64,000 nt of DNA, taken from IMG/VR virus record IMGVR_UViG_3300020477_000990, positions 186,001 to 250,000 of that record, one strand, 5' to 3'. This document shows, in pieces, positions 5,045-63,926 of the stretch (the stretch's first letter is position 1; every line of letters begins with the position of its first letter). Below the pieces are notes generated by a model. It saw nothing but the letters and a program-made list of their open reading frames with translations. It ran no database searches and was not told the DNA's origin. A program made the translations under genes and the position numbers.

Positions 5045-5050
5045 AGTTAC

Positions 5051-5335
5051 CTACCTTATATTTTTTAATTTAGGAATTCTAATTACTATACCTGCTCTAA
5101 AATCTTGAATAGGATCAATTAATATGTTTTCATTTCTTACAGCAAATACCCACCAATAGTCTACAGTTCCATATTTATTGTTTGATAATAAATCTGGTCT
5201 TTTGTCATATTTTGATTCAATAACATAAGACTCATCTGACTCATCTTTAATAATATATTTTGGATCCATTATATCAAGGTAATCACCTTTAATTGATGTT
5301 TTACTATATGGACTTGTAGATTTATATGATGCCAT
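5051..5335 (-). CDS. Baseplate wedge LysM/gp53-like protein
   Basis: 'RPDLLS...YGTVDYWWVFAVRN...DF..G..IRIP' LysM/tail-X pattern. Confidence 0.75.
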   Translation of the reverse strand: MASYKSTSPYSKTSIKGDYLDIMDPKYIIKDESDESYVIESKYDKRPDLLSNNKYGTVDYWWVFAVRNENILIDPIQDFRAGIVIRIPKLKNIR

Positions 5336-6045
5336 TAATAAAATCCTTTATCTAATAATTTTCCTGTACGGAAATCTTCTAAATTAAATTCGTCTCTTAA
5401 TGCTGATGGATTAGGACTTACAACCAAATCAACAAACACATTAAGAATTAATGGTACATATGATTTTGATAGCATTTCTTGAAGTTGTGAAGTTTCGTTT
5501 CTTTGTTCTTGGATATTCATTCCTTCATAATCCATTGAAGAACCGCATGGAACATAATCAACATCTTGGTCTAAACCATAAGCAACTGATCTTATATATA
5601 CTGGTGTTCTATCAAACATTGCAGGACCATAAGCACTAAAGGCTAATTTTGGAGGTGGTGTACCTCTTTTTTGACGGTCTGCTTTATCTGATTCAACTCC
5701 ACCAAAAGCAGATTTTGACACCACTCTAAAAAAATGTAAAGCGGCCATCATATATGATGCTTCTTCTTCAGTATGAGCACCAAAAGTTCCTGTAACAGTC
5801 ATTGATGGTGATTGTGTTCTTGAGTATGCTAGATAATCATAGTTTGTGTGTGGTAGTTCATATTGTCCAAAACCAACGTTGGCGTGTTGTACTTGAATCA
5901 TTGGAGTATATGGAAACATTAATCCATTTGTTTTCCATAATGGTCTTATTAAATTACCTGGTTCATCTGGACCATAAATTAAGGCCTTATGTTCAGGTAA
6001 TTTACCCATTGCTTGAATTTTTGCTCTATAATCTGTACGTGCCAT
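5335..6045 (-). CDS. Tail tube initiator / baseplate gp48-gp54-like protein
   Basis: 'LMFPYTPMI...TNY.Y.AY...SP...VTGTF' tube-initiator pattern; directly upstream of LysM gene. Confidence 0.6.
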   Translation of the reverse strand: MARTDYRAKIQAMGKLPEHKALIYGPDEPGNLIRPLWKTNGLMFPYTPMIQVQHANVGFGQYELPHTNYDYLAYSRTQSPSMTVTGTFGAHTEEEASYMMAALHFFRVVSKSAFGGVESDKADRQKRGTPPPKLAFSAYGPAMFDRTPVYIRSVAYGLDQDVDYVPCGSSMDYEGMNIQEQRNETSQLQEMLSKSYVPLILNVFVDLVVSPNPSALRDEFNLEDFRTGKLLDKGFY

Positions 6046-6053
6046 TATAGTAT

Positions 6054-6059
6054 TATTTA
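6054..6059 (-). promoter_or_regulatory. Late promoter core TAAATA for baseplate operon
   Basis: TAAATA 8 nt upstream of ATG 6045; no SD. Confidence 0.6.
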
Positions 6060-6096
6060 TTGGAAAAATTAACTACACACATAATAAAAAACATTC

Positions 6097-6125
6097 TTGA
6101 CTTTTAGCCGTTAATATTATATTAT
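6097..6125 (+). promoter_or_regulatory. sigma70-like promoter for gp55-gp47-gp46
   Basis: TTGACT-17-TATTAT. Confidence 0.6.
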
Positions 6126-6149
6126 ATTATATAAATCAAAGGATATAGT

Positions 6150-6956
6150 GTGGCTAAAAGAGTAAATTACCTTAATAACAAAGATATGTTGGCTGAAATT
6201 CATAAGAGTAAAACCTCTTATTGCCATTATACAAAGCCAGAATATCAGCAATATGACATAATTTTACCAAGTATTTCAAAGATTAATAGGCTAACAATAT
6301 CACAAGCACGTAAGAACCATGCAGAAAGATTACTTCAAATTAAAGTAGATGAGCTTGGGCTAAAAAGATCACAATATGATGAATATAGAGTTGATCATAA
6401 AACAATACCTGTAACTTCTTTAATTTTTAGAGTAATGACATATGATCATATTCCAGATGAACCGGGGCGTAAATTAAATCCAAAAACTGTTGCTGACACA
6501 AAAGTTAAATTAAATTTTCCACCATTTAAACATTATAAGTTAAACAAAAATGGACAACCTTTTGAAGTAGGAAAAAGCCATTATAGAAATCATAATGAAT
6601 TTTGTTTAGATCATGGAAAAATTACACCAAAGTTAGCTACTATGTTTATTAAGTTATGCCATAGATATGGTACACGAGCTAACTGGCGAGGATATACGTA
6701 TAACGATGAAATGCAAGGACAAGCATTGTTACAATTATCACAAATTGGTTTACAATTTGATGAGTCAAAATCACAAAATCCATTTGCTTATTATACAGCA
6801 ACAATTACAAACTCATTTACAAGAGTTTTGAATATGGAAAAGAAAAATCAAAATTTAAGAGATGACTTGTTACAAGAGGCAGGAGTAATGCCATCCTTAA
6901 CAAGACAAATGCAAAACGAAGAAAAGCAGAAAGAACCACCCAAGGAAACTAAATGA
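6150..6956 (+). CDS. gp55: Late transcription sigma factor, T4 gp55-like
   Basis: N-terminal 'NYLNNKDML.EI' and 'NPFAYYT..I.NSF.R.LN.EKK'; upstream of gp47/gp46 as in T4-like phages. Confidence 0.8.
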   Translation: MAKRVNYLNNKDMLAEIHKSKTSYCHYTKPEYQQYDIILPSISKINRLTISQARKNHAERLLQIKVDELGLKRSQYDEYRVDHKTIPVTSLIFRVMTYDHIPDEPGRKLNPKTVADTKVKLNFPPFKHYKLNKNGQPFEVGKSHYRNHNEFCLDHGKITPKLATMFIKLCHRYGTRANWRGYTYNDEMQGQALLQLSQIGLQFDESKSQNPFAYYTATITNSFTRVLNMEKKNQNLRDDLLQEAGVMPSLTRQMQNEEKQKEPPKETK

Positions 6957-15702: not shown

Positions 15703-15742
15703 TTGCTTATTTTATTAAAATACTATATAATTTATATAAATA
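15703..15742 (+). promoter_or_regulatory. Tandem sigma70-like and T4-late promoters upstream of portal
   Basis: TTGCTT-17-TATAAT (15703-15731) and exact TATAAATA (15735-15742). Confidence 0.65.
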
Positions 15743-15766: not shown

Positions 15767-17485
15767 ATGAGCTGGAAAAAACATTTTACAGAATATAGCA
15801 CAAAATTAGGTCAACAGTCAGTAATTGGTAATGCTGGAACGTCATATGGTAGTTCTTCACAATCAAAATACAGCACATGGTTACCAGAAGTATATGCAGG
15901 TCAACCAAATCGTATTGAACGTTATTACCAATATGATCAAATGGATTTAGATACTGAAATTAATGCTTCATTAGATACTATTGCAGAATTTGCCACTCAA
16001 GTAGAAACAAAAACAGGTACCCCATTTAAAATATTTTATAAAGATAAGCCAACAGATACAGAAACAGAAATTTTAAATCAATCAATTAAGCAATGGACTA
16101 ATATAAATGATTGGGACAAAAGATGCTTTAAGTTATTTAGAAATGTTATTAAGTATGGAGACCAAGTATTTGTTAGAGATCCAGAAACTTATAAATTACT
16201 TTGGGTTGATCAAAGTAAAATTGAAAAAATTATTGTTAATGAAGGTAAAGGTAAAAAACCAGAAGCATACTTTATTAGAGATTTAGATTTAAATTTACAA
16301 AACTTAAACTTAACAACAATGAGTCAATATAAAATGTCGGCTCCTATAGCATTCCAAGGTGGTAGTATGCCTTTTGCCACAGATGCAAAATATCAAGGAG
16401 TGACAACAAGTATTAGTACGTCAACAGGTGGTAGATTTATGCAAGAAACTCAAACAACACCTGTAGATGCTTCGCACATAGCACATATAAGTTTATCAGA
16501 AGGTATGGATAGATTTTGGCCTTTTGGTACTTCAGTACTAGAAAGTATTTTTAAAGTTTATAAACAAAAAGAATTATTAGAAGATGCAATTATAATTTAT
16601 AGAGTACAAAGAGCACCTGAAAGAAGAGTGTTCTATATTGATGTAGGTAATATGCCAACAAATAAAGCAATGGCATTTATTGAAAGAGTTAAAAATGAAA
16701 TACACCAAAAACGTATTCCAAATAAAACAGGTGGTGGTGCTAATGTAATGGATGCCGCATATAATCCATTGTCAATGATTGAAGATTATTTCTTTGCACA
16801 AACGGCTGAAGGTAGAGGATCAAAAGTTGAAACATTACCAGGTGGACAAAACTTAGGCGAAATTGATGATTTAAAATACTTTAATAATAAGTTGATGAAA
16901 GGCTTAAGAATTCCATCAAGTTATTTGCCATCAACACCAGAAGATCCAGGGTCAGCATTTACTGATGGTAGAGTTGGTACAGCATATATACAAGAATTTA
17001 GATTTACAAAATATTGTAAACGTTTACAATCAATGATTATGCCAACACTTGATAAAGAATTTAAAATGTTTTTAAAACATAGAGGTATTGAAATTGATTC
17101 AGGATCATTTGAATTACAATTTAATGAACCACAAAACTTTGGTAAGTATAGACAAATTGAAATTGATAATCAACAAACAAGTATCTTTACACAATTACAA
17201 CAAATTCCATTTATGTCAAAACGTTTTGCAATGAAACGTTATCTTGGACTTGATGAACATGAAATTTATCAAAATGAAAAATTGTGGGCAGAAGAAAATG
17301 CAAATGTAACAGGTCCAGCACCACAAGGTGATGATATAGCCGGCGGAGCAGGATTAAGTGATGTTGGTGCGGCTCCAATGCCAATGGCAGAACCAGAAGC
17401 AGATGCTGATGTAACTGACCCAGATACAGCAGGTGAAACTCCACCAATTAGTGGTGCTGAACCTACTCCAGACGAAACAGCATAA
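15767..17485 (+). CDS. gp20: Portal protein
   Basis: 'EDAIIIYRVQRAPERRVFYIDVGNMP', 'EDYFF...EGRGSKVETLPGGQNLGEIDDLKYF'. Confidence 0.96.
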   Translation: MSWKKHFTEYSTKLGQQSVIGNAGTSYGSSSQSKYSTWLPEVYAGQPNRIERYYQYDQMDLDTEINASLDTIAEFATQVETKTGTPFKIFYKDKPTDTETEILNQSIKQWTNINDWDKRCFKLFRNVIKYGDQVFVRDPETYKLLWVDQSKIEKIIVNEGKGKKPEAYFIRDLDLNLQNLNLTTMSQYKMSAPIAFQGGSMPFATDAKYQGVTTSISTSTGGRFMQETQTTPVDASHIAHISLSEGMDRFWPFGTSVLESIFKVYKQKELLEDAIIIYRVQRAPERRVFYIDVGNMPTNKAMAFIERVKNEIHQKRIPNKTGGGANVMDAAYNPLSMIEDYFFAQTAEGRGSKVETLPGGQNLGEIDDLKYFNNKLMKGLRIPSSYLPSTPEDPGSAFTDGRVGTAYIQEFRFTKYCKRLQSMIMPTLDKEFKMFLKHRGIEIDSGSFELQFNEPQNFGKYRQIEIDNQQTSIFTQLQQIPFMSKRFAMKRYLGLDEHEIYQNEKLWAEENANVTGPAPQGDDIAGGAGLSDVGAAPMPMAEPEADADVTDPDTAGETPPISGAEPTPDETA

Positions 17486-17533: not shown

Positions 17534-17929
17534 ATGAAAATTTACGAAATTAGCAATACAGATTTTTATTGTTTTGAGCCAGTATTAGGCGAAGCAAGTA
17601 GAAGACAAGGTGGAGCATTCCAAATATTTGGTAGAAGTCCAGGTAAATTTGGATCAGGTGCTAAAAAAGGAAAACTAACTAGAAAATTTAGATGTCCTAC
17701 AGGTCCACGTAAAGGACGTATTGTTGCTAAACCTGAAACTTGTAATGCACCGTTAAATGTTAGACAAAGTACTAGAATGAAAGGCACACGTGCCGCGAAA
17801 GCTGGAATACATGGTAAAAAATCAAGCTATACTAAAAAATATAGTCCAGCATCAATACGTACTAAAAAAATGAATAAAGGCTTAAAGAAATTGCGTGGTA
17901 GAGCAAGAAAAAGTATTAGAAGAAGGTAA
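17534..17929 (+). CDS. Basic prohead core protein (gp68-like)
   Basis: Very Lys/Arg-rich 131 aa between portal and protease. Confidence 0.55.
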   Translation: MKIYEISNTDFYCFEPVLGEASRRQGGAFQIFGRSPGKFGSGAKKGKLTRKFRCPTGPRKGRIVAKPETCNAPLNVRQSTRMKGTRAAKAGIHGKKSSYTKKYSPASIRTKKMNKGLKKLRGRARKSIRRR

Positions 17930-17937: not shown

Positions 17938-18138
17938 ATGCGTTATAGAGAGTTAATTAAAGAGAATTATTTTCCAGCAGATGATCAATATCATCAAGCA
18001 ACTGTTAACGATAGTCGTAAGACTAGATTAACTTTAGTTCATTTAAATAAGTTGCGTAAAGTACGTGAAATGCGTAAAGCAGATAAAGAAAAAAACAGCG
18101 AATTTGTAGCTACAATGTATGCTCCAGTAATGCAATAG
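17938..18138 (+). CDS. Small head-module hypothetical protein
   Basis: 66 aa, starts MRYRELIKE. Confidence 0.6.
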   Translation: MRYRELIKENYFPADDQYHQATVNDSRKTRLTLVHLNKLRKVREMRKADKEKNSEFVATMYAPVMQ

Positions 18139-19338: not shown

Positions 19339-19968
19339 ATGGTAAAACCGTTACTAGAGAGTTTAACTTTTGACCAAGCCGGAATGCAAGTATTACATGA
19401 AGGCGAAGGTGATAAGAAAAACTTATATATGAAAGGTGTTTTCATCCAAGGCGGAGTGAAAAACCAGAATCAACGTGTTTATCCACTTGAAGAAATTCAA
19501 AAAGCAGTTTCTTCAGTAGATGAAAGATTGAAATCTGGATTTTCAGTTTTGGGAGAAGCCGATCATCCTGAAGAATTAACAGTCAATTTGGATCGTGTGT
19601 CACATATGATAGAAAATATGTGGATGGACGGTCCGAATGGAATTGGTAAACTTAAAATTTTACCAACCCCAATGGGGAATATTGTTAAAACACTTTTGGA
19701 AAGTGGAGCGAAATTAGGTGTAAGCTCAAGAGGAACAGGAAACGTTAATGAGTCAGGCAATGTGTCTGATTTTGAAATTGTTACTGTTGATATTGTAGCT
19801 CAGCCATCGGCTCCAGATGCTTATCCGAAAGCAATATATGAAGGTCTTATGAACATGAGAGGCGGCAGACGAATTTATGGTCTAGGCGCTGAATCCGTAT
19901 ATGATCGTAGGGCTGAACGTTACCTTAAAGAAGAGGTAATGAAATTAATAAAAGAGCTGAAGTTATAG
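19339..19968 (+). CDS. gp21: Prohead protease
   Basis: 'GVFIQGGVKNQNQRVYP', 'GEADHP', 'LGVSSRGTG', 'DIVAQPSAPDAY'. Confidence 0.95.
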   Translation: MVKPLLESLTFDQAGMQVLHEGEGDKKNLYMKGVFIQGGVKNQNQRVYPLEEIQKAVSSVDERLKSGFSVLGEADHPEELTVNLDRVSHMIENMWMDGPNGIGKLKILPTPMGNIVKTLLESGAKLGVSSRGTGNVNESGNVSDFEIVTVDIVAQPSAPDAYPKAIYEGLMNMRGGRRIYGLGAESVYDRRAERYLKEEVMKLIKELKL

Positions 19969-19979
19969 GAGAACGACTC

Positions 19980-21092
19980 ATGGCAGATATTTTTACAGGT
20001 ATTCTTGAAGCAGACGGTATTTCAGAAGAATTGAAAAATCAAATTCAAGAAACGTGGAAAACTAAATTAGATGAAGCCAGAGAAGAAATCACAGCTGAAC
20101 TTCGCGATGAGTTTGCTCAACGTTACGAAAGTGACAAGAGCCAAATTGTTGAAGCAATGGACAAAATGTTAACTGATAGACTTGTTTCAGAAATGGAAGA
20201 GTTTAAAGCTGACAAAGAAGCTTTAGCGACAGAAAGAGTTGCATACAAAACTAATGTTGCAAAACATTTAGGTTTGGTAGACAAATTTGTTGCTGAGCAC
20301 CTTGCTAAAGAAGTGAAGGAATTACACGCTGATAAGACTGATTTGAAAAACAATTTTGCAAAATTGGAAAACTTTGTTGTTAAACAATTAGCAAAAGAGT
20401 TAACTGAGTTTGAAAATGACAAAAAAGCAGTTGTAGAACAAAAAGTTAAATTAGTAGCAGAAGGCAAGAAAATGATTGCTGAAGCTAAAAAACGTTTTGT
20501 TACTAAAGCGGCTGGTGTTGTTGAGAAAGCAGTTGAAAAATCACTAACTAGCGAATTATCACAACTTAAAGATGATATTAAAGTTGCTAAACAAAACAAC
20601 TTTGGTAGAAAAGTATTTGATGCATTCGCAGGCGAGTATATGTCTTCTCATCTAGCCGAAGGTACAGAGGTTAGAAAACTTCAAAAAGAATTAGAAACTG
20701 TTAAAGCAAATACTACTGAAACAGAATCTAAGATTAAAGAAAAAGACGCTGAAATTGAAGCAACTCAGACTAAATTGAGAATTGCTGAAGATAAAAACAT
20801 TCGTGAAAAAACTCTAGTAGAGTTAACAAGTGCTTTATCTAAAGATAAGCGTCGAGTAATGAATGAATTGCTTGAATCTGTACAAACAAGCGATTTAAAA
20901 AAGCAGTTTAACAAATACTTGCCAGCTGTTTTAAATGAATCTGCTCCGGCAGAATCAAATAAAACAATTGTTACTGAATCAGCTGATTCAAGAACAGAGG
21001 TAACTGGTAACAGAGAAACACCTGCTGAGCCTAGCTCAGAAGCTGGTGAAATTGTTGAACTTAAAAAACTAGCAGGTCTAGGAGTTAAGTAA
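19980..21092 (+). CDS. gp22: Prohead scaffolding protein
   Basis: Long coiled coil between protease and capsid; LLES/LNES/VTES cleavage-like sites. Confidence 0.85.
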   Translation: MADIFTGILEADGISEELKNQIQETWKTKLDEAREEITAELRDEFAQRYESDKSQIVEAMDKMLTDRLVSEMEEFKADKEALATERVAYKTNVAKHLGLVDKFVAEHLAKEVKELHADKTDLKNNFAKLENFVVKQLAKELTEFENDKKAVVEQKVKLVAEGKKMIAEAKKRFVTKAAGVVEKAVEKSLTSELSQLKDDIKVAKQNNFGRKVFDAFAGEYMSSHLAEGTEVRKLQKELETVKANTTETESKIKEKDAEIEATQTKLRIAEDKNIREKTLVELTSALSKDKRRVMNELLESVQTSDLKKQFNKYLPAVLNESAPAESNKTIVTESADSRTEVTGNRETPAEPSSEAGEIVELKKLAGLGVK

Positions 21093-21093
21093 A

Positions 21094-22290
21094 ATGACTG
21101 ATAAAGTAATCACAGATCAATGGGCTGATACAAAGAAGGCTTTAACTGAAGGTCTTGAAGGCCAAAGAAAAGCTTCAATGGAAACAGTTCTAGAGAATAC
21201 TAAATCATACTTGGCAGAGGCGGCAACAACAGGTGCTACAGGCGCCGGTAACGTTGCGGCTTTAAACAAAGTTGTATTGCCAATTATTAGACGTGTGATG
21301 CCAACTGTTATTGCGAACGAAATCATTGGTGTGCAACCAATGACTGGTCCAGTTGGACAAATTCACACATTAAGAGTTAGATATGCAGAAACAGCCGCTG
21401 GCGTAACAGCAGGTTCGGAAGCATTATCACCATTCGACATTGCAAGATCTTATTCAGGTTCTGGCACGTCAGACGATGGTAACCAAGGAACAGCAGGAAT
21501 GACTGGTGCAACTACTTCTACTTTAGAGGGTGCGGCAGGTTCTAAGATGTCAATTCAAATCTTAAAACAAACTGTTGAAGCTAAAACAAGAAAACTATCT
21601 GCAAGATGGACATTTGAAGCGGCGCAAGACGCAAGTGCTATGCACGGTTTAGATGTTGAAGCAGAAGTTATGGCGGCTTTAGCTCAAGAAATTACTGCTG
21701 AGATTGACCAAGAAGTTTTAACATCATTAGATAGATTAGCGGCACCAGGTGGTACTGCAGATGCTACTTATGATCAAAACTCTACAACAGGTACAGCAAC
21801 GTTTATTGGGGACAAACACGCGGCTTTGGCTGTTATGATCAATCAACAAGCTAACTTAATTGCACAAAAAACAAGACGTGGCGCGGCTAACTGGGCAGTG
21901 GTATCACCACACGCATTAACAGTTATCCAATCTGCGACAACTTCAGCGTTTGCAAGAACAACTGAAGGTACGTTCGAAGCTCCAACAAATACTAAATTCG
22001 TTGGTACATTAAATGGCGCTATGAGAGTTTATGTTAACTCTTATGCGGCTTCTTCAGCAAGAATCCTTATTGGATACAAAGGTGCTGGTGAAGTTGATGC
22101 GGCGGCTTTCTATTGCCCATACATTCCACTAATGTCTTCAGGCGTTATCGTTGATCCGTCAACTTTTGAACCAGTAGTAAGCTTCATGACAAGATATGGT
22201 TATGTTGAGTTAACAAACACAGCATCATCACTTGGTAATTCAGCTGACTATGTGGCTTCAATTGCGTTATCAAACGTAACATTTATCTAA
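21094..22290 (+). CDS. gp23: Major capsid protein
   Basis: 'IIGVQPMTGPVGQI', 'VEAKTRKLSARWTFEAAQD', 'FYCPYIPL', 'FMTRYG'. Confidence 0.97.
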   Translation: MTDKVITDQWADTKKALTEGLEGQRKASMETVLENTKSYLAEAATTGATGAGNVAALNKVVLPIIRRVMPTVIANEIIGVQPMTGPVGQIHTLRVRYAETAAGVTAGSEALSPFDIARSYSGSGTSDDGNQGTAGMTGATTSTLEGAAGSKMSIQILKQTVEAKTRKLSARWTFEAAQDASAMHGLDVEAEVMAALAQEITAEIDQEVLTSLDRLAAPGGTADATYDQNSTTGTATFIGDKHAALAVMINQQANLIAQKTRRGAANWAVVSPHALTVIQSATTSAFARTTEGTFEAPTNTKFVGTLNGAMRVYVNSYAASSARILIGYKGAGEVDAAAFYCPYIPLMSSGVIVDPSTFEPVVSFMTRYGYVELTNTASSLGNSADYVASIALSNVTFI

Positions 22291-40794: not shown

Positions 40795-41406
40795 ATGAAA
40801 ACATTTAAAGACTATCTTGCAGAAGCAGTAAAAGAGTACACGTTTAAAGTTAAAATTGCTGGTATTCTTGAAGATGAACATTTAAGCTCAATGGAAAGAG
40901 CTTTATCACGTTATAACGTAGTTAAAATGTCATCACCTAAAAAAACTATTATGCAAGAACATCCACTGGATTTTCCAACAGATGTTACAAACACAGAAGT
41001 AACAATGTTTGAAGTAACAACTTCACTTCCGGTATCATATGATACTGTAGCAAGACAAATTTCTGATCATACAGGAATACCATTTCAATCAGTTGTAGTA
41101 ACACACGAAGGTATGCCTTTAGAGCAAGAGCAAGTTAAAGAAATTGAAAAAGCAAAAGCTAAACCAGAAGATTATAAACCAGTTATGGGTCAAGCATACG
41201 ATAAAAAAGAAGAAGCTAATACTAAAAATGTAGTACATGATGAAAAATCTAAAGTAAGTTTTTTAGCTAAATTAGAAAAAGCTAAAAAAGAACGTGCAAA
41301 CGTTGAAGTAGTTACAGGCTTATCAGAAAGTAAAGAACCAGAAACATTAAGTCCGTCAACTACAATTACTACACCAACAAGTTATTTTGCAAAGGGGAAA
41401 AAATAA
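40795..41406 (+). CDS. Putative internal head protein
   Basis: N-terminus MKTFKDYLAE resembles T4 capsid-targeting sequence. Confidence 0.55.
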   Translation: MKTFKDYLAEAVKEYTFKVKIAGILEDEHLSSMERALSRYNVVKMSSPKKTIMQEHPLDFPTDVTNTEVTMFEVTTSLPVSYDTVARQISDHTGIPFQSVVVTHEGMPLEQEQVKEIEKAKAKPEDYKPVMGQAYDKKEEANTKNVVHDEKSKVSFLAKLEKAKKERANVEVVTGLSESKEPETLSPSTTITTPTSYFAKGKK

Positions 41407-58571: not shown

Positions 58572-59183
58572 ATGGCGGATTTAGATAGAAAGAAAAAAGA
58601 AGATAAAGCAAGAGGGCCGACCCCATCTCCACAACCATTACAACCAGGAGTAATGATGTGGGAAGCTGGAATAATGTATTTTAGTGAACCATTTGATGCT
58701 AAAACAACGCAACCAGTTATTAACACAATTATCGAAAAGAACTTATTGCCAAATTCACAAAGACCAAATGAACTTACGTTAGTAATTAATTCACCAGGTG
58801 GGCAAGTTCATTCAGCATTTGCTTTAATTGACACGATGAAAGGATCAGCTATTCCTGTAAAAACTGTAGGATTAGGTATGATAGCATCATGTGGATTATT
58901 AACATTTATGAGTGGAACAAAAGGACGTAGAGTGTTAACACCAAATACATCTATATTATCACATCAATATAGTTGGGGATCAGGCGGAAAAGAACACGAA
59001 TTATTTGCAAGAGTACGAGAATTTGAATTAAGCACAAAAAGAATGATTGAACATTACAAAAAATGTACAGGATTATCTGAAAAGAAAATTAGAGAGATAT
59101 TATTACCACCAGAGGACGTTTGGTTATCAGCCAAAGAAGCAGTCAAATATGGTATAGCAGATAAAATTGTAAAAACTTATTAA
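58572..59183 (+). CDS. clpP: ClpP-like serine protease
   Basis: 'INSPGG', 'IASCG' (Ser), 'SHQ' (His), 'EDVWLSA.EAV.YG..D' (Asp). Confidence 0.85.
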   Translation: MADLDRKKKEDKARGPTPSPQPLQPGVMMWEAGIMYFSEPFDAKTTQPVINTIIEKNLLPNSQRPNELTLVINSPGGQVHSAFALIDTMKGSAIPVKTVGLGMIASCGLLTFMSGTKGRRVLTPNTSILSHQYSWGSGGKEHELFARVREFELSTKRMIEHYKKCTGLSEKKIREILLPPEDVWLSAKEAVKYGIADKIVKTY

Positions 59184-60021: not shown

Positions 60022-60189
60022 ATGGGTATGGATATTAAAAGAGAATATAGTGCTGATAAACCAGAAGATATAAAAGCAAAAGAAGATGCAAAGAAAAAAA
60101 TGTGGAAAGAGTTTTTTGCAAAAGGTGGAAAAATTGAAAAGATTCCATATAAGGTAACAAAAGATCAATTGAAAAAAGGACAACTGTAA
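60022..60189 (+). CDS. 55-aa protein with SutA RNAP-binding-like motif (not in ORF track)
   Basis: MGMDIKREY...EFFAKGGKIEKIPY; TAATG overlap with helicase; TTGTAA-17-TAATAT-6-ATG. Confidence 0.65.
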   Translation: MGMDIKREYSADKPEDIKAKEDAKKKMWKEFFAKGGKIEKIPYKVTKDQLKKGQL

Positions 60190-61619
60190 TGGCCGCATCT
60201 GACTATAAAAATTATGATGAAAGTTTACAAAAACTTTTTATAGAGTTTTGTGCAACTGATCCTGAGTTATTTGTAAGAGTAAAAAATATAGTTAGGAAAG
60301 AATATTTTTCAGGAAAATTATCTAATGCAGTTAAGTTTATGTTAGAGCATACTGAACAATATAATGCATTACCAACAACTGAACAAATTAAAGCAACCTG
60401 TGATGTAGAATTAACAAAAGTTGAAATAACTGAACAACATAAAAATTGGTTCTTTGATGAGTTTGAAACATTTTGTAGGCACAAGGCATTAGAACACGCA
60501 ATTATAAGTTCAGCTGATTTATTAGAAAAAGGCGATTATGGTCAAGTAGAAGAAAAAATAAAACACGCAGTAAGAATTGGACTTACAAAAGATTTAGGTA
60601 CAGATTACTTTGTTGATCCAAAAGCAAGATTGTTAGCACTTAAAGATAATAATGGCACAATTAGTACAGGATGGACAGCATTAGATCAAAAATTATATGG
60701 TGGATTTAATAAAGGTGAATTGAATATATTTGCAGGACAAAGTGGTGCAGGTAAAAGTTTATTTTTACAAAATCTTGCATTAAATTGGGTAACTTCTGGA
60801 ATGAATGTAGTTTACTTTACTTTTGAGTTAAGTGAAAATTTAAGTTCGATGAGAATTGATTCGATGTCAACAGGTGTAGCATCAAATGAAATATTTAAAA
60901 AGATTGATGATATTGATTTAATGGTACGTATGCAAGGACAAAAAGCAGGTAAGTTTCAATTAAAGTACATGAATAGTGGATGTACAGTAAATGATTTAAG
61001 ATCATATATAAAAGAATATGAAGTACAAACAAATGCAAGACCAGATTGTATTTGTGTTGATTATTTAGATTTGTTAATGCCAATTAGTAAGAGAGTTTCA
61101 CCAAGTGATTTATATATTAAAGACAAATATGTATCTGAAGAATTACGTAATTTAGCAGTAGAAAATCAAATTGTATTAGCAACAGCATCACAATTAAATA
61201 GGTCATCAGTAGAAGAAATTGAATATGATCATTCACATATAGCTGGTGGGTTAAGTAAGGTTCAAACAGCTGATAATGTTATAGGGATTCAAACTAGTAG
61301 AGCTATGCGTGAACGTGGTAGATATTTAATACAATTAATGAAAACTAGGTCAAGTGGTGGTATTGGAAATAAAATATCATTATCATTTAATATAGATACC
61401 TTAAGAATTACTGATCTAACTGAAGAGCAAATAGCAGAAGATGATAATATGACGTCATCATCAATAACTAGTTCTATTAAGAAGCGAACTGCTACAATTA
61501 AGCCAAAAACACCACAAAATCAAGGAGCTCAAGTAGTTCAACAAGTAGAACAAGTAGCAAATTTACGTAGTATGCTTAAGACTAGAAGAACTGCATTAGA
61601 TGACACAGACAAGTTATAA
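60189..61619 (+). CDS. gp41: Replicative DnaB-like helicase
   Basis: GQSGAGKS, 'FTFELSE', 'VDYLDL', 'TASQLNRS', 'QLMKTR'. Confidence 0.93.
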   Translation: MAASDYKNYDESLQKLFIEFCATDPELFVRVKNIVRKEYFSGKLSNAVKFMLEHTEQYNALPTTEQIKATCDVELTKVEITEQHKNWFFDEFETFCRHKALEHAIISSADLLEKGDYGQVEEKIKHAVRIGLTKDLGTDYFVDPKARLLALKDNNGTISTGWTALDQKLYGGFNKGELNIFAGQSGAGKSLFLQNLALNWVTSGMNVVYFTFELSENLSSMRIDSMSTGVASNEIFKKIDDIDLMVRMQGQKAGKFQLKYMNSGCTVNDLRSYIKEYEVQTNARPDCICVDYLDLLMPISKRVSPSDLYIKDKYVSEELRNLAVENQIVLATASQLNRSSVEEIEYDHSHIAGGLSKVQTADNVIGIQTSRAMRERGRYLIQLMKTRSSGGIGNKISLSFNIDTLRITDLTEEQIAEDDNMTSSSITSSIKKRTATIKPKTPQNQGAQVVQQVEQVANLRSMLKTRRTALDDTDKL

Positions 61620-61681
61620 TACACACTTATATAGGTTTCCTTTAATAATAAATAATAGTATAAGATTTAGGAGATGTAGTT

Positions 61682-61945
61682 GTGAATAAGCGAAATACAA
61701 AATCAATACTTGAAGAAATCAGTAAAGTTATACCAAATAGCAATCGTGAGTCATTAATTGAATCACGAGCTGGGCACGTTATATCTTCAGCTATAAATCT
61801 TATTGATATGCTCCACGAGTCATATGATCAAGAAACTGCCGGCGAGCTAACTAGACGTTTAGTTAATAGTATTAAAAGTAGCGACCCTGCTAAATTTGAA
61901 CGTGGAATTAGAAGGGTTTTACAGAATAAAAATGAAGATAAATGA
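61682..61945 (+). CDS. Hypothetical helical protein
   Basis: GTG start, GGAG SD, TAAATA at 61649. Confidence 0.65.
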   Translation: MNKRNTKSILEEISKVIPNSNRESLIESRAGHVISSAINLIDMLHESYDQETAGELTRRLVNSIKSSDPAKFERGIRRVLQNKNEDK

Positions 61946-63926
61946 TATTAAAATCGATGAAAATATCAACACACATTTAACCCATTTAGAAGATTTAAGT
62001 CTTTTTAATGGTAAAAAAGGTGCGGTGCAGGCACTTGGTTTTTTAACAGGATTATCTAATATTGTAAAAGGGAATTCATCAAAAAAATTTAATATTACTA
62101 CAAAATGGGATGGGTCTCCAGCAATTGTTTGTGGAACAGATCCTAAAGATGGTAAATTTTTTATTGGCACAAAAGGTGTTTTTAACAAAAACCCAAAATT
62201 AAATAAGTCAATGAAAGATGTATCAGTAAATCATGCTGATACAGTTGCTAAAGGTGAAACTACAGATAAAAGTGAGTTAAGAGGCAAATTAAGACAAGCA
62301 TTAAAATATTTAGAAAAATTAAATATTAAAGGTGTATTACAAGGTGATTTAATGTTTACACAAGGTGACCTTCAAGAAAAGAATTGCCAAGGTGAAGCTT
62401 GTATAACGTTTCAACCAAATGAAATAGTTTATGCTGTCCCATCAAATAGTGAATTAGCACAAAGAATTAAAAGAGCTAAAGTTGGAATAGTATTTCATAC
62501 ATCATATGAAGGTGATAGTTTAGATAATATGACAGCGTCATTTAGAGTTGATTTATCTAATTTAACACCTACACCAGATGTTTGGTTTGATGATGCATAT
62601 ATTAAAGACTATTCTGGTATGGCAACAATGACAGCACAAGAGTCAGCGGCAGTAGATTCTGGAATAGCTCAAATAAAAAGTAGTTTGCAATCAGTAGGAA
62701 ATGCATTTGAATTTTTAGATGGTTCTGAAGCTGGTAATGATTTAAAGATTAATATTGCGGCTAATATTAATTCTAATATTAAGCAAAATGTAATACAACA
62801 AAATCCTGAAACATTTTTTAATCAATTTGTTGAGGATTATAAGAAAAGAGCAGAAGCTAAAATAGAGCAATTAAAGACGGGTAGAGAGGGTGTTGCAGGA
62901 CAACGTCGCTTAAATGCCCTACAAATTGGCTTAAATTACTTAAATACTAATAAGAATAATATGTTGAGTTTTTACTCTATATGGCTTAAATTAGGTGCTA
63001 TGAAGAACATATTATATAAAAAATTATCAAGTATTAAAGCAATTGATAGTTTTGAACAAAATGGAGATGAATTAAAAGTAAGAGATCCAGAAGGTTTTGT
63101 TGCTGTTGACCATATAGGAAATGCAATAAAAGTTGTGGATAGATTAGATTTTAGTAGGAAAAATTTTATGAAAAAAGAAGGTATAGAATTAGATTTAGTT
63201 ACACAATTGCTTACTGAAGCAAGAATGTTTAAATCAAGACAAGGTGTATCAAAGTTTTCAGCACGTGAAATAGCTGATATGGCTTTTGCACATTGTATCG
63301 CTTTGCAAGTAATGAATCGTGAATTCAAGTACACATCAGTTGCAAAAAGTTATGCATCAAGAACTTCAAGTTATGGTAACTATGATTATTTTAGATCAAA
63401 TGGTACTGATTTATATGTAATGTTACACGCCTTATTTGGTAAAGGTTCTATTATTAAATTTGATGATGAAAAAAATAGTAAAATTTTATTAAGCAGAATG
63501 AAAAGTGATATAATGCCGTTTAGAGAATTTTTAAGTCATATTGGATCTTCAGGATCAAATACTGATACTGAACAACGTATGTTAATGAGATTGCAAGGAG
63601 CATTGTATATTTCAAACAGTAAGTTACGTTCTATGAAACGTTTAGCAGGTGATTGGGAAAATTTAAAAACACGAGAAAAAAGAACATTAGTATCTAGCTT
63701 ATTAACTTATTTTAGATCAAATTCACCTATGTCATCGCTTACAACTTATATTCAAAGATTAGCACGTGAACGTGATTTTGGTGATGATAAGCAAAAAGTT
63801 AAAACATCAAAAGCAATGGCAGTTGGTGCGGCATTGGCAGGTGCATATTTAGGTTATAAACTTGGTCGTGGTAAAACACCAAGCTATGCAGATAAAAAAT
63901 TTAATTTTAAAAAGGATAAAAAATAA
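61932..63926 (+). CDS. Covalent nucleotidyltransferase/RNA-ligase-like protein (DUF6267-like) with extra C-terminal domain
   Basis: KWDG (motif I, Lys58), 'LQGDL', 'EGFV', 'KVVDR'; start moved to ATG 61932. Confidence 0.65.
   Translation: MKINDIKIDENINTHLTHLEDLSLFNGKKGAVQALGFLTGLSNIVKGNSSKKFNITTKWDGSPAIVCGTDPKDGKFFIGTKGVFNKNPKLNKSMKDVSVNHADTVAKGETTDKSELRGKLRQALKYLEKLNIKGVLQGDLMFTQGDLQEKNCQGEACITFQPNEIVYAVPSNSELAQRIKRAKVGIVFHTSYEGDSLDNMTASFRVDLSNLTPTPDVWFDDAYIKDYSGMATMTAQESAAVDSGIAQIKSSLQSVGNAFEFLDGSEAGNDLKINIAANINSNIKQNVIQQNPETFFNQFVEDYKKRAEAKIEQLKTGREGVAGQRRLNALQIGLNYLNTNKNNMLSFYSIWLKLGAMKNILYKKLSSIKAIDSFEQNGDELKVRDPEGFVAVDHIGNAIKVVDRLDFSRKNFMKKEGIELDLVTQLLTEARMFKSRQGVSKFSAREIADMAFAHCIALQVMNREFKYTSVAKSYASRTSSYGNYDYFRSNGTDLYVMLHALFGKGSIIKFDDEKNSKILLSRMKSDIMPFREFLSHIGSSGSNTDTEQRMLMRLQGALYISNSKLRSMKRLAGDWENLKTREKRTLVSSLLTYFRSNSPMSSLTTYIQRLARERDFGDDKQKVKTSKAMAVGAALAGAYLGYKLGRGKTPSYADKKFNFKKDKK

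What the first reader, a model, noticed from the sequence alone, without database searches (positions are those of the whole stretch)
61932..63926. Ligase-like nucleotidyltransferase that looks capsid-targeted and protease-processed
Seen: motifs KWDG, QGD, EGFV and KVVDR (covalent nucleotidyltransferase motifs I, III, IV, V); an N-terminus MKINDIKIDE; and an internal LLTE-A (63210-63221) exactly where the ligase-like region ends and a ~235-aa unrelated domain begins. A late TAAATA promoter lies upstream (61649). Established: T4 gp21 cleaves after (I/L/V)xE and T4 Rnl1 repairs tRNA cut by host anticodon nucleases. Inference: a polyprotein packaged in the head, cut in two and injected as a pre-made RNA-repair or counter-defence enzyme.
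Basis: partly seen in the sequence, partly recalled or inferred. Interest (0 to 1): 0.6.

Follow-up and report, generated by a model that had tools for sequence, protein, structure and literature searches.

The report
Packaged ligase-like phage polyprotein candidate
A late gene of a 328-kb marine T4-like phage fuses a ligase-fold enzyme of an uncharacterised family (DUF6267) to a helical partner protein; both halves keep T4-style head-targeting and cleavage leaders, so the product is probably packed into the capsid, cut in two and delivered with the DNA, which is predicted here but not yet shown.

Summary
Residues 13-414 are Pfam DUF6267. An AlphaFold model of this part has RNA and DNA ligases as its best solved-structure matches (top Z 8.7). 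The KWDG, QGD, EG and K..DR residues are invariant in 50 homologs, but sequence profiles do not link the family to ligases.

The last 235 residues form a separate helical family. It is normally a free-standing gene just downstream of DUF6267, so this gene is a fusion.

The capsid-targeting idea has comparative support:
- 77 of 82 DUF6267 N-termini carry a variable leader ending (L/I)xE.
- 130 of 149 representatives of the helical family carry a leader of about 11 residues ending LxE-S/A.
- The fused forms keep that leader as the invariant LTE-A junction.
- T4 IPII and IPIII begin MKTYQEFIAE-A.
- The genome encodes a gp21-type protease, and its capsid protein has a matching LAE-A site.
- A positionally enriched ATAAATA element precedes the operon.

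Leaderless cyanophage homologs were not found in virion proteomes, whereas a leader-bearing neighbour was. Packaging, cleavage and catalysis remain untested, and the RNA-repair role is unsupported. Verdict: a real feature and a new variant of known kinds, of moderate to high interest.

The parts
61648..61654 (+). ATAAATA, a T4-late-promoter-like element 28 nt upstream of the 87-aa ORF that heads the operon.
   Evidence: The genome holds 102 copies, and 81 lie 1-100 nt upstream of a same-strand ORF start, a zone that makes up 6.7% of the sequence space. In the window the motif is depleted (23 copies against 53 expected). A gp55-like ORF lies at window 6150-6956 (tblastn E 8e-5).
61682..61945 (+). 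87-aa ORF that overlaps the start of the main ORF by 14 nt. It belongs to a family named 'virion structural protein' in several jumbo phages.
   Evidence: It matches phrog_11854 at E 2e-20. tblastn finds homologs in 85 phage records, including PA5oct, CBB, the 121Q group, Serratia BF and Atu_ph07, some annotated as structural. The same small gene precedes DUF6267 in loci L086-L090.
61932..63926 (+). Main ORF of 664 aa (P0001), 74 kDa, pI 9.5.
61932..61961 (+). Predicted capsid-targeting and cleavage leader MKINDIKIDE, with cleavage predicted after E10.
   Evidence: I8 and E10 sit at the positions that govern processing of the T4 IPIII leader (PMC9026906). T4 IPII and IPIII start MKTYQEFIAE-A. 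77 of 82 family N-termini end a leader with [LIVMFC]xE. Residues 1-14 are disordered in the model.
61962..63218 (+). Predicted mature DUF6267 part, aa 11-429 (46 kDa, pI 8.5), with a ligase-like nucleotidyltransferase fold.
   Evidence: Pfam PF19782 scores 322 bits. The model has pLDDT 81.9. VIA-align Z is 8.7 to 7.0 against RNA ligases.
62103..62114 (+). KWDG, the candidate motif I, with K58 as the predicted nucleotidyl-accepting lysine.
   Evidence: It is invariant in 50 homologs. In the model it lies in a loop between strands 54-57 and 64-69.
62337..62351 (+). LQGDL, the candidate motif III, on strand 135-143.
   Evidence: Q137, G138 and D139 are invariant. The register against solved ligases was not verified.
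62625..63035 (+). Helical insertion (aa 232-368) between the two halves of the ligase-like core. It is shortened in the cyanophage short forms.
   Evidence: Model secondary structure. The Syn9 gp183 alignment lacks much of this segment.
63090..63143 (+). EGFVAVD ... KVVDR, the candidate motifs IV and V.
   Evidence: E387, G388, V390, K400 and R404 are invariant. They lie on strands 389-392 and 398-401.
63207..63221 (+). LLTE-A junction, with an internal cleavage predicted after E429. It is the retained leader of the formerly separate downstream gene.
   Evidence: It is invariant in all fused homologs, while the linker before it varies and has indels. Free-standing homologs begin with leaders that end at the aligned LxE. 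Model confidence is low on both sides of the junction.
63219..63923 (+). C-terminal helical domain, aa 430-664 (27 kDa, pI 10.1). It belongs to a family without a name, and no informative fold match was found.
   Evidence: There is no Pfam or PHROG hit. The model has pLDDT 75.7 and is all-alpha. Only generic helical-bundle matches appear. The family has 738 representative clusters, mostly free-standing proteins of 230-300 aa.
63813..63866 (+). Gly/Ala-rich uncharged segment (aa 628-645), followed by a basic tail.
   Evidence: Read from the sequence. A similar tail occurs in 29 of 119 free-standing representatives. Its function is unknown.
19339..19968 (+). gp21-type prohead protease (Peptidase_S77), the enzyme expected to cut at the LxE sites.
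   Evidence: the genome search with PF03420 gives 93 bits, E 2.4e-27.
21094..22290 (+). gp23-type major capsid protein. Its SYLAE-AATTG aligns with the SFLTE-AEIGG of T4 gp23.
   Evidence: PF07068 scores 322 bits. That T4 gp23 is cut at this site is established knowledge, and the T4 record notes cleavage by gp21.

Best explanation
P0001 is a natural fusion of two proteins that most related marine T4-like phages encode as neighbouring genes. One is a DUF6267 enzyme with the fold and signature residues of a lysine-nucleotidylating polynucleotide ligase. The other is a basic all-helical partner protein.

Each ancestral gene carried a short N-terminal leader of the T4 capsid-targeting type, ending (L/I)xE. 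The proposed course of events is as follows. The gene is transcribed from an ATAAATA (T4-late-type) promoter together with a small virion-protein-family gene. The precursor is drawn into the prohead core through its N-terminal leader. The phage's gp21-type protease then cuts after E10 and after E429. The resulting basic 46-kDa ligase-like enzyme and 27-kDa helical protein stay in the head and enter the cell with the DNA.

Shown here: the domain architecture, the fold-level similarity to ligases, the fusion history, the family-wide leaders, the protease and capsid-site context, and the positional enrichment of the promoter-like motif.

Inferred: packaging, cleavage, injection and catalysis.

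Most speculative: that the enzyme joins or nucleotidylates nucleic-acid ends at the very start of infection, with the helical protein as its substrate-binding or localising subunit.
For: Family and fold:
- Pfam DUF6267 matches at E 7e-96.
- The AlphaFold model has pLDDT 81.9 and pTM 0.73.
- In VIA-align against 48,161 chains, the top 12 matches are all RNA or DNA ligases: NgrRnl Z 8.7 over 183 aa at 3.7 A, REL1 Z 8.1, T4 Rnl1 Z 7.2 and T4 Rnl2 Z 7.1.
- In BFVD, the Atu_ph07 'RNA ligase' matches at E 1.3e-3, probability 0.99.
- The KWDG, QGD, EG.V and K..DR residues are invariant.

Fusion:
- A free-standing C-domain gene lies one or two genes downstream of DUF6267 in L086-L090, L013, L014, L016 and L023.
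- The C-domain family has 738 representative clusters, mostly stand-alone.

Leaders:
- 77 of 82 DUF6267 N-termini carry one.
- 130 of 149 C-domain representatives have the site, against 19 of 149 in a control window. The commonest leader length is 11, with P3 L or I and P1' S or A.
- The junction is invariant in fused forms.
- The T4 IPII, IPIII and IPI leaders were read from NC_000866. The rules for the CTS come from PMC9026906.

Context:
- The genome has a Peptidase_S77 protease.
- The capsid protein's LAE-A aligns with T4 gp23's LTE-A.
- A paralog of the gp68-position basic core protein lies three genes downstream.
- The upstream ORF belongs to a family named virion structural.
- ATAAATA is positionally enriched.

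Natural contrast: leaderless cyanophage DUF6267 (T4-GC 71) has no proteomic detection. The adjacent T4-GC 190 protein, whose leader in P-SSM4 is MKKFSAFLKE-A, was found in P-SSM4 virions with 25 peptide counts (PMC3037559 supplements).

Both predicted mature parts are basic.
Against: - No experiment shows this protein, or any leader-bearing homolog, in virions or cleaved.
- Sequence methods give no link to ligases. These were the Pfam scan, the profile against PDB sequences, and hhalign against T4 Rnl2 as a single sequence and as a profile. Foldseek against PDB has no hit at E <= 0.001.
- Z values of 7-9 are only middling by the tool's own calibration.
- The residue register between the listed motifs and ligase motifs I-V could not be checked, because no structural alignment is printed.
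- Candidate motif III has D where ligases have E, and candidate motif V has one lysine instead of two.
- The conserved LxE could be a structural feature of the first helix rather than a cleavage site.
- The loose motif occurs in 13% of this genome's ORFs.
- The P1' residue after E10 is N, whereas A or S is the usual residue in the other leaders.
- DUF6267 lies in the replication gene cluster next to the helicase, and cyanophage versions evidently work without a leader.
Confidence: 0.55

Rival explanations
1. The protein is an ordinary cytoplasmic two-domain enzyme. It is made late or throughout infection, stays intact in the cell and works with the replication and repair machinery. On this view the N-terminal and junction LxE motifs are structural or coincidental.
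For: - The gene sits directly after the primase and the gp41-type helicase, and before an exonuclease and NrdA.
- The same synteny is seen in HTVC008M, S-PM2, P-HM2, Syn9 and P-SSM4.
- Cyanophage homologs lack leaders and were not detected in three virion proteomes.
- In S-PM2, DUF6267 is fused without any leader to a cytidylyltransferase-like domain, which is a plain two-domain enzyme.
- The loose motif is common.
Against: - The leaders vary in length from 6 to more than 40 residues and in sequence, yet 77 of 82 end in (L/I)xE.
- An unrelated neighbouring family shows the same feature at a fixed distance of about 11 residues from the Met, in 130 of 149 representatives against 19 of 149 controls.
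- The fused forms keep the site invariant inside an otherwise variable linker with indels.
- The leaders resemble the T4 IP leaders closely.
- The operon contains genes of virion-protein families and a paralog of a prohead-core protein.
Confidence: 0.22
2. The protein is a non-catalytic head-internal or scaffold-associated protein. It is packaged and processed, but the ligase-like core is a pseudoenzyme or binding module rather than an active nucleotidyltransferase.
For: - There is no profile-level similarity to ligases.
- The motif III and V candidates depart from the ligase consensus (read from the sequence).
- Z values are middling.
- The protein is basic like the T4 internal proteins.
Against: The residues at the candidate catalytic positions (K58, D60, G61, D139, E387, G388, K400, R404) are invariant across homologs down to 38% identity, and in the short cyanophage forms as well. 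That pattern is expected for an active site and not for a decayed one. The family is also repeatedly fused to or adjacent to another nucleotidyltransferase-type enzyme.
Confidence: 0.12
3. The protein is a T4 Rnl1-style tRNA repair ligase that counters host anticodon nucleases.
For: RNA ligases, including T4 Rnl1 and the fungal tRNA ligase, are among the best fold matches. The genome carries 16 tRNA genes.
Against: - No Pfam RNA-ligase family matches the protein.
- PF09414 finds nothing in the genome.
- No PNK3P-type end-healing domain was found.
- The best fold matches are the nick-sealing types (NgrRnl, REL1), not Rnl1.
- Nothing in the neighbourhood points to tRNA.
Confidence: 0.08

Closest known systems
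T4 internal head proteins IPI, IPII, IPIII and Alt (capsid targeting sequence, processed by gp21)
   Same: Both have a short N-terminal leader ending (L/I)xE, with I at position 8 and E at position 10 as in IPIII. Both have basic mature products. Both come from genomes with a gp21-type protease and a capsid protein that has a homologous cleavage site. Alt is likewise an enzyme delivered pre-made.
   Different: There is no sequence relation in the mature parts. Here the cargo is a ligase-fold enzyme plus a helical partner, joined in one precursor with an internal site. Hydrophobic residues sit at positions 3 and 6 rather than 4 and 7. Packaging is only predicted.
ATP-dependent RNA ligases of the nick-sealing kind (Naegleria NgrRnl/Rnl5, trypanosome REL1, T4 Rnl2) and T4 Rnl1
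   Same: These are the best structural matches, at Z 8.7-7.0 with 171-200 residues aligned. The protein has a KxDG element in a loop between two strands, and later EG and K motifs on adjacent strands.
   Different: - No sequence-profile similarity was found.
- A 137-residue helical insertion splits the core.
- The protein has an invariant N-terminal N.HL.H.ED element and an FHT.Y element that these ligases are not known to have.
- The candidate motif III has D rather than E, and the candidate motif V has a single lysine plus an arginine.
- No OB domain or Rnl-type C-terminal domain is present.
Pfam DUF6267 (PF19782) = T4-GC 71, a gene listed in all 16 cyanomyovirus columns of the T4-GC table (Syn9 gp183, PSSM4_154, PHM2_162)
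   Same: The protein is a clear member, at 322 bits against a cut-off of 27. It shares the position downstream of the gp41 helicase.
   Different: The cyanophage isolates are leaderless, are often shorter (about 310-320 aa), and are followed by or fused to a cytidylyltransferase-like protein rather than the helical domain. The family has no assigned function, and no paper in the library mentions it.
Processed ejection and inner-body proteins of giant phages (phiKZ, 201phi2-1, SPN3US)
   Same: Many head proteins of these large phages, some of them enzymes, are cut after Glu by a gp21-related protease and delivered to the cell (PMC9026906).
   Different: Those phages and proteins are unrelated in sequence. 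This genome is T4-like (gp20, gp21, gp22, gp23 in T4 order), not phiKZ-like.

Membership tests
Pfam DUF6267 (PF19782) | Score above the curated gathering threshold over the full model | tested here: met
   322.2 bits against a cut-off of 27, covering aa 13-414 on model positions 1-374 of 376. It also matches phrog_455.
Covalent nucleotidyltransferase superfamily (ATP/NAD ligases, capping enzymes) | Nucleotidyltransferase-domain fold | tested here: met
   The predicted model's top 12 matches among 48,161 chains are all ligases, at Z 8.7-6.5 with 171-205 residues aligned. Foldseek against BFVD matches an annotated phage RNA ligase at probability 0.99. This is fold-level evidence from a prediction, with middling Z.
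Covalent nucleotidyltransferase superfamily (ATP/NAD ligases, capping enzymes) | Motif I KxDG with a conserved lysine nucleophile | tested here: met
   K58-W-D-G is invariant in 50 homologs. It lies in a loop between two strands.
Covalent nucleotidyltransferase superfamily (ATP/NAD ligases, capping enzymes) | Motifs III, IIIa, IV and V in order and in structural register | tested here: inconclusive
   Invariant candidates occur in the right order: QGD 137-139, F160/Y167, EG 387-388, K400/R404. No residue-level superposition is available. D replaces E in motif III, and motif V has one lysine.
Covalent nucleotidyltransferase superfamily (ATP/NAD ligases, capping enzymes) | Detectable sequence or profile homology to a ligase family | tested here: not met
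   The Pfam scan to E 1 finds only DUF6267. phmmer and hmmsearch against PDB sequences find nothing relevant. hhalign against T4 Rnl2 and a 14-sequence Rnl2 profile gives probability below 1%.
Covalent nucleotidyltransferase superfamily (ATP/NAD ligases, capping enzymes) | Formation of a covalent enzyme-NMP intermediate | not testable with these tools
   Needs a biochemical assay (label transfer from alpha-labelled NTP, with a K58A control).
T4-type CTS-bearing, gp21-processed head-internal proteins | Short N-terminal leader ending (L/I)xE, cleaved after Glu | tested here: met
   The sequence feature is present (MKINDIKIDE, and LLTE-A at the junction) and is conserved family-wide. It compares well with T4 IPII, IPIII and IPI. 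Cleavage itself is not shown.
T4-type CTS-bearing, gp21-processed head-internal proteins | A gp21-family prohead protease in the same genome, with matching capsid-protein processing sites | tested here: met
   PF03420 scores 93 bits at window 19339-19968. The capsid protein's LAE-A aligns with T4 gp23's LTE-A.
T4-type CTS-bearing, gp21-processed head-internal proteins | Late expression | tested here: inconclusive
   An ATAAATA element lies 28 nt upstream of the operon. The motif is strongly enriched upstream of ORF starts (81 of 102), and a gp55-like ORF is present. Timing is inferred by analogy with T4 only, and the motif also precedes genes that do not look structural.
T4-type CTS-bearing, gp21-processed head-internal proteins | Physical presence of the processed protein in virions | not testable with these tools
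   Only indirect evidence exists. Leaderless cyanophage homologs were not detected, while the leader-bearing neighbour T4-GC 190 was detected in P-SSM4 virions (PMC3037559 supplements).
T4 Rnl1/Pnkp tRNA-repair system | Rnl1-family ligase plus an end-healing kinase-phosphatase | tested here: not met
   The protein has no RNA-ligase Pfam match. PF09414 is absent from the genome, as is PF08645. PF09511 and kinase families were not searched genome-wide, so absence is not complete.

The most novel reading that the evidence does not exclude
DUF6267 and its helical partner may form a widespread two-part system of marine T4-like phages. Both would be pre-packaged in the capsid through T4-type targeting leaders and delivered with the genome. 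This would be the first polynucleotide-ligase-type enzyme known to travel inside a virion. It would act on DNA or RNA ends in the first moments of infection, for example by sealing, capping or protecting the entering genome, or by undoing host nuclease damage. DUF6267 has thousands of metagenomic proteins, and the partner has 738 clusters at 50% identity. In the lineage of this 328-kb phage the two proteins are made as one precursor and separated by the prohead protease.
Probability: 0.3. Interest if true: 0.8.

Novelty: new variant of a known kind. Interest (0 to 1): 0.62.

Why it matters
DUF6267 (T4-GC 71) is listed in all 16 cyanomyovirus genomes of the T4-GC table in PMC3037559. It is also abundant in ocean metagenomes, with more than 5,000 word-search hits. 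It still has no function, and no paper in the searched library mentions it.

This work assigns the family a ligase-type fold with a candidate catalytic lysine. It also shows that most non-cyanophage members and their partner protein carry T4-style head-targeting leaders. Together these turn an anonymous core gene into a testable hypothesis.

If the hypothesis holds, the repertoire of enzymes that phages inject ahead of gene expression grows to include a nucleic-acid end-joining or nucleotidylating activity. So far that repertoire includes ADP-ribosyltransferase, restriction inhibitors and RNA polymerases.

The leader analysis also gives a simple sequence rule for predicting head-packaged cargo in uncultured T4-like phages. 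It has a built-in natural control, namely leaderless against leader-bearing orthologs.

Tried and rejected
- Sequence routes to a function for the N-domain all gave nothing beyond DUF6267. They were the Pfam scan to E 1, PHROGs, phmmer and profile hmmsearch against PDB sequences, and hhalign against T4 Rnl2 alone and against a 14-sequence Rnl2 profile.
- Foldseek against PDB gave no hit at E <= 0.001 for either domain.
- For the C-domain, VIA-align wide, the ESM Atlas fold search and the Atlas feature search gave only generic helical bundles or nothing, so no function is proposed from fold.
- hhalign of the C-domain against the cyanophage cytidylyltransferase-like neighbour and against the Atu_ph07 gene that follows the 87-aa homolog showed no relation.
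- Atu_ph07 has no DUF6267 by profile search.
- Complex prediction on the N-domain against the C-domain returned no verdict (score 0.00). This is evidence neither for nor against binding.
- The idea that DUF6267 is the phage's replicative DNA ligase was dropped as the main reading, because the genome has a canonical ATP-dependent DNA ligase (PF01068, G000 305257-305847).
- The sigma-70 promoter and terminator scans around the operon did not exceed the shuffled controls.
- The loose single-sequence leader pattern was rejected as evidence in itself, since it fits 59 of 441 ORFs.
- I did not use the sequencing-run or read-laying tools, because expression data would not test packaging or cleavage.
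Full report
THE OBJECT

The window lies at 186001-250000 of a 328,149-bp virus record with terminal repeats, about 32% G+C. The record is T4-like. The window holds, in T4 order:
- a portal gene (15767-17485);
- small core-type ORFs;
- a gp21-type protease (19339-19968, Peptidase_S77, 93 bits);
- a scaffold-like ORF (19980-21092);
- a gp23-type capsid protein (21094-22290, 322 bits).

Further on it holds a primase, a ClpP-like protease, ThyX and a gp41-type helicase (60189-61619). The ORF in question follows the helicase. It runs from ATG 61932 to the stop at 63926 and gives 664 aa (P0001). An 87-aa ORF (61682-61945) overlaps its start by 14 nt.

CHECKING THE OBSERVATION

KWDG is aa 58-61, QGD 137-139, EGFV 387-390 and KVVDR 400-404. 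The N-terminus is MKINDIKIDE, LLTE-A is aa 426-430 (63207-63221), and TAAATA is at 61649 within ATAAATA 61648-61654.

Pfam places aa 13-414 in DUF6267 (E 7e-96). All 467 phage-isolate matches stop at aa 412.

WHAT THE N-TERMINAL PART IS

I aligned 50 homologs of 38-76% identity (A2). The invariant residues include H15, H18, E20, K58, W59, D60, G61, Q137, G138, D139, F160, Y167, H189, T190, Y192, E387, G388, V390, K400 and R404.

The AlphaFold model built on this alignment is confident (pLDDT 81.9, pTM 0.73). Its ends are disordered (aa 1-14 and 416-425), and a helical insertion (aa 232-368) splits a beta-rich core.

Foldseek against PDB gave no significant hit, although ligases led the weak ones. 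The exhaustive VIA-align search was clearer. Its top twelve matches among 48,161 chains are all polynucleotide ligases: NgrRnl at Z 8.7 (183 aa, 3.7 A), REL1 8.1, fungal Trl1 7.4, T4 Rnl1 7.2 and T4 Rnl2 7.1, followed by DNA ligases and capping enzymes. In the viral model library, beyond family members, an Atu_ph07 protein named RNA ligase matches at E 1.3e-3 and probability 0.99, and further RNA ligases follow more weakly.

Against this, no sequence or profile method connects the family to ligases. I also could not check the residue register of the motifs. My reading is that a ligase-type nucleotidyltransferase fold is likely (about 0.8), that an active site is plausible given the invariant residues, and that the substrate is unknown.

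The genome has its own canonical ATP-dependent DNA ligase. I found no PF09414 RNA ligase and no PNK3P domain. The protein is therefore not the only ligase in the genome, and a T4-style tRNA repair pathway has no visible support.

WHAT THE C-TERMINAL PART IS

Residues 430-664 have no Pfam or PHROG match. They fold as an all-helical domain (pLDDT 75.7, core about 88). That model matches only generic helical bundles.

The word search found a 238-aa free-standing relative, P0132. On its contigs the gene order is primase, helicase, an 85-aa ORF, DUF6267 (423 aa), a 68-aa ORF, then P0132. Other lineages have the free-standing gene directly after DUF6267 (L013, L014, L016, L023).

A profile search of 1.84 billion representatives found 738 clusters. 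Most are stand-alone proteins of 230-300 aa whose match begins at their first residues. The 664-aa protein is therefore a gene fusion, present in a clade of marine metagenomic proteins of 628-676 aa down to 47% identity.

A separate finding is that cyanophage S-PM2 and some uncultured phages fuse DUF6267 to a cytidylyltransferase-like domain instead. In Syn9, P-SSM4, P-HM2 and Syn1 that domain is the next gene.

THE LEADERS

T4 IPII and IPIII begin MKTYQEFIAE-A, and IPI begins MKTFKEF...ITE-A (read from NC_000866). T4 gp24 begins MAKINELLRE-S, and gp23 has ...SFLTE-AEIGG. The review PMC9026906 states three things. The first ten residues of IPIII suffice for head targeting. Residues 8 and 10 govern processing. 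gp21 cuts after Glu with few other determinants.

In 82 complete DUF6267 N-termini from IMG/VR and metagenome loci, 77 carry a leader ending [LIVMFC]xE within nine residues of the conserved N.HL.H.ED core. These leaders range from 6 to more than 40 residues. Examples are MKFQEFLTE-A, MKSFKKYIAE-A and MYSFKQYLNE-A. P0001 has MKINDIKIDE-N, with I8 and E10.

The unrelated C-domain family shows the same feature. Of 149 mutually distant representatives, 130 have [LIVMFCY]xE[SAGN] in the first 25 residues, against 19 of 149 in a control window. The commonest leader length is 11. P3 is L (76%) or I (15%), and P1' is S (80%) or A (13%).

In the fused proteins this leader survives as the linker. For example, IELDLVTQLLTE-ARMF in P0001 aligns with MELSFINKEITE-ARMF in L016. 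The (L/I)(T/S)E-(A/S)R core is invariant in every fused homolog, while the preceding linker varies and has indels. Model confidence is low around both sites, as expected for accessible segments.

SUPPORTING CONTEXT

- The capsid protein's SYLAE-AATTG aligns with T4 gp23's SFLTE-AEIGG, so the protease probably has T4-like specificity.
- The 131-aa basic ORF at the gp68 position (17534-17929, leader ending LGE-A) has a paralog three genes downstream of P0001 (E 1e-18).
- The 87-aa upstream ORF belongs to a family annotated as virion structural in several jumbo phages.
- A 289-aa ORF further down matches another PHROG named 'virion structural protein'.
- ATAAATA occurs 102 times in the genome. 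Of these, 81 lie 1-100 nt upstream of a same-strand ORF start, a zone that is 6.7% of the space. In the window the motif is depleted overall (23 against 53 expected).
- One ATAAATA copy lies 28 nt before the 87-aa ORF.
- A gp55-like ORF exists.
- That these units are late is inferred by analogy with T4. The motif also precedes genes that do not look structural.

EXPERIMENTAL DATA FROM THE LITERATURE

In Sullivan et al. 2010 (PMC3037559, supplementary files 2 and 3), T4-GC 71 has no entry under 'Existence of Proteomic Data?'. T4-GC 71 is the DUF6267 homolog in Syn9 (gp183, hhalign E 4.5e-34), P-SSM4, P-HM2 and Syn1.

T4-GC 190, the neighbouring cytidylyltransferase-like protein, is marked detected. 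By my reading of the column order in Table S8, it was found in P-SSM4 virions with 25 peptide counts and not in S-PM2 or Syn9.

Those cyanophage DUF6267 proteins start directly at the conserved core (MPNKHLEH, MSKNTHLEH) and have no leader. P-SSM4 GC 190 starts MKKFSAFLKE-A. The one available contrast therefore agrees with the leader rule, but it is a single case. It also shows that DUF6267 can work without being packaged.

MECHANISM I COMMIT TO

The operon is transcribed from the ATAAATA element. The 74-kDa precursor enters the prohead core through its leader. The gp21-type protease cuts after E10 and E429. Basic products of 46 kDa (pI 8.5) and 27 kDa (pI 10.1) remain with the DNA and are delivered at infection. 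There the ligase-type enzyme acts on nucleic-acid ends, with the helical protein as an accessory.

Rough confidence by step:
- fold: 0.8;
- fusion history: 0.95;
- packaging and processing: 0.6-0.65;
- catalytic activity: 0.6;
- any specific substrate: low.

The complex prediction for the two halves returned no verdict and is not used.

RIVALS

They are set out in their own sections.

NOVELTY

The protein is a member of a known but uncharacterised Pfam family. Both the fold class and the targeting mechanism have precedents. Three things are new:
- the pairing of the two, a ligase-type enzyme as predicted head cargo;
- the partner family;
- the polyprotein form with a retained internal leader.

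I rate it a new variant of a known kind, with interest 0.62.

Noticed in passing
window 40795-41406 (+): A 203-aa ORF with no Pfam match starts MKTFKDYLAE-A, very close to the T4 IPI and IPIII leaders. An ATAAATA lies 19 nt upstream (40770). It is a strong further candidate for head-packaged cargo.
   Followed up: partly
window 17534-17929 and 17938-18138 (+); paralog at G000 250601-250891 (window-equivalent 64601-64891, just past the window end): Between the portal and the gp21-type protease lie a very basic 131-aa ORF (leader ending LGE-A, at the gp68 position) and a 66-aa ORF starting MRYRELIKE-N. The basic ORF has a 96-aa paralog three genes downstream of the studied gene (BLASTP E 1e-18).
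   Followed up: partly
whole genome G000; window examples at 15736, 17508, 30205, 40770 and 61648: ATAAATA behaves as a genuine promoter-like signal. The genome has 102 copies, and 81 lie within 100 nt upstream of a same-strand ORF start. The full T4 form TATAAATA is rarer (5 in the window).
   Followed up: yes
window 61682-61945 (+): The 87-aa ORF has homologs in unrelated jumbo phages (Vibrio 2.275.O, PA5oct, CBB, the 121Q/K64-1 group, Serratia BF, SCTP-2, Atu_ph07), several annotated as virion structural. In Atu_ph07 it also sits just after the primase/helicase gene.
   Followed up: partly
L004 (S-PM2, AJ630128) 4983-6762; L095 (Syn9) 2772-4884: In S-PM2, DUF6267 continues without a stop into a cytidylyltransferase-like domain. 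The old record splits it by a frameshift into p138 and p139, and BFVD holds a 591-aa fused protein. In Syn9, P-SSM4, P-HM2 and Syn1 the two are adjacent genes. The 'cytidyltransferase' label of T4-GC 190 therefore partly covers DUF6267 sequence in S-PM2.
   Followed up: partly
G000 94952-95270 and genome ends (outside the window): ARAGORN finds 16 tRNA genes and a tmRNA-like gene (tag ADENLALAA). The record's terminal repeat coincides with a tRNA-Ala at both ends (1-76 and 328075-328149), which looks like an assembly overlap of a circularly permuted genome.
   Followed up: no
window 58572-59183 (+): A ClpP/S49-like protease ORF (PHROG 'head maturation protease', E 3e-28) lies between the primase and ThyX. 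The genome thus has a second protease besides the gp21-type one in the head module.
   Followed up: no
L003 7422-7450 (window-equivalent 68422-68450, past the window end): A perfect sigma-70 consensus (TTGACA, 17 nt, TATAAT, with TG) sits before the exonuclease and NrdA genes. It may mark the end of the ATAAATA-driven unit that contains the studied gene.
   Followed up: no
L011-L013, L023, L028, L040, L049 (IMG/VR loci): One DUF6267 clade has a long leader with an Arg/Lys-rich insert (about 30 residues, of the type ...RRFRGPRKPR...) between an MKIKDI start and the final LxE. Its meaning is unknown.
   Followed up: no
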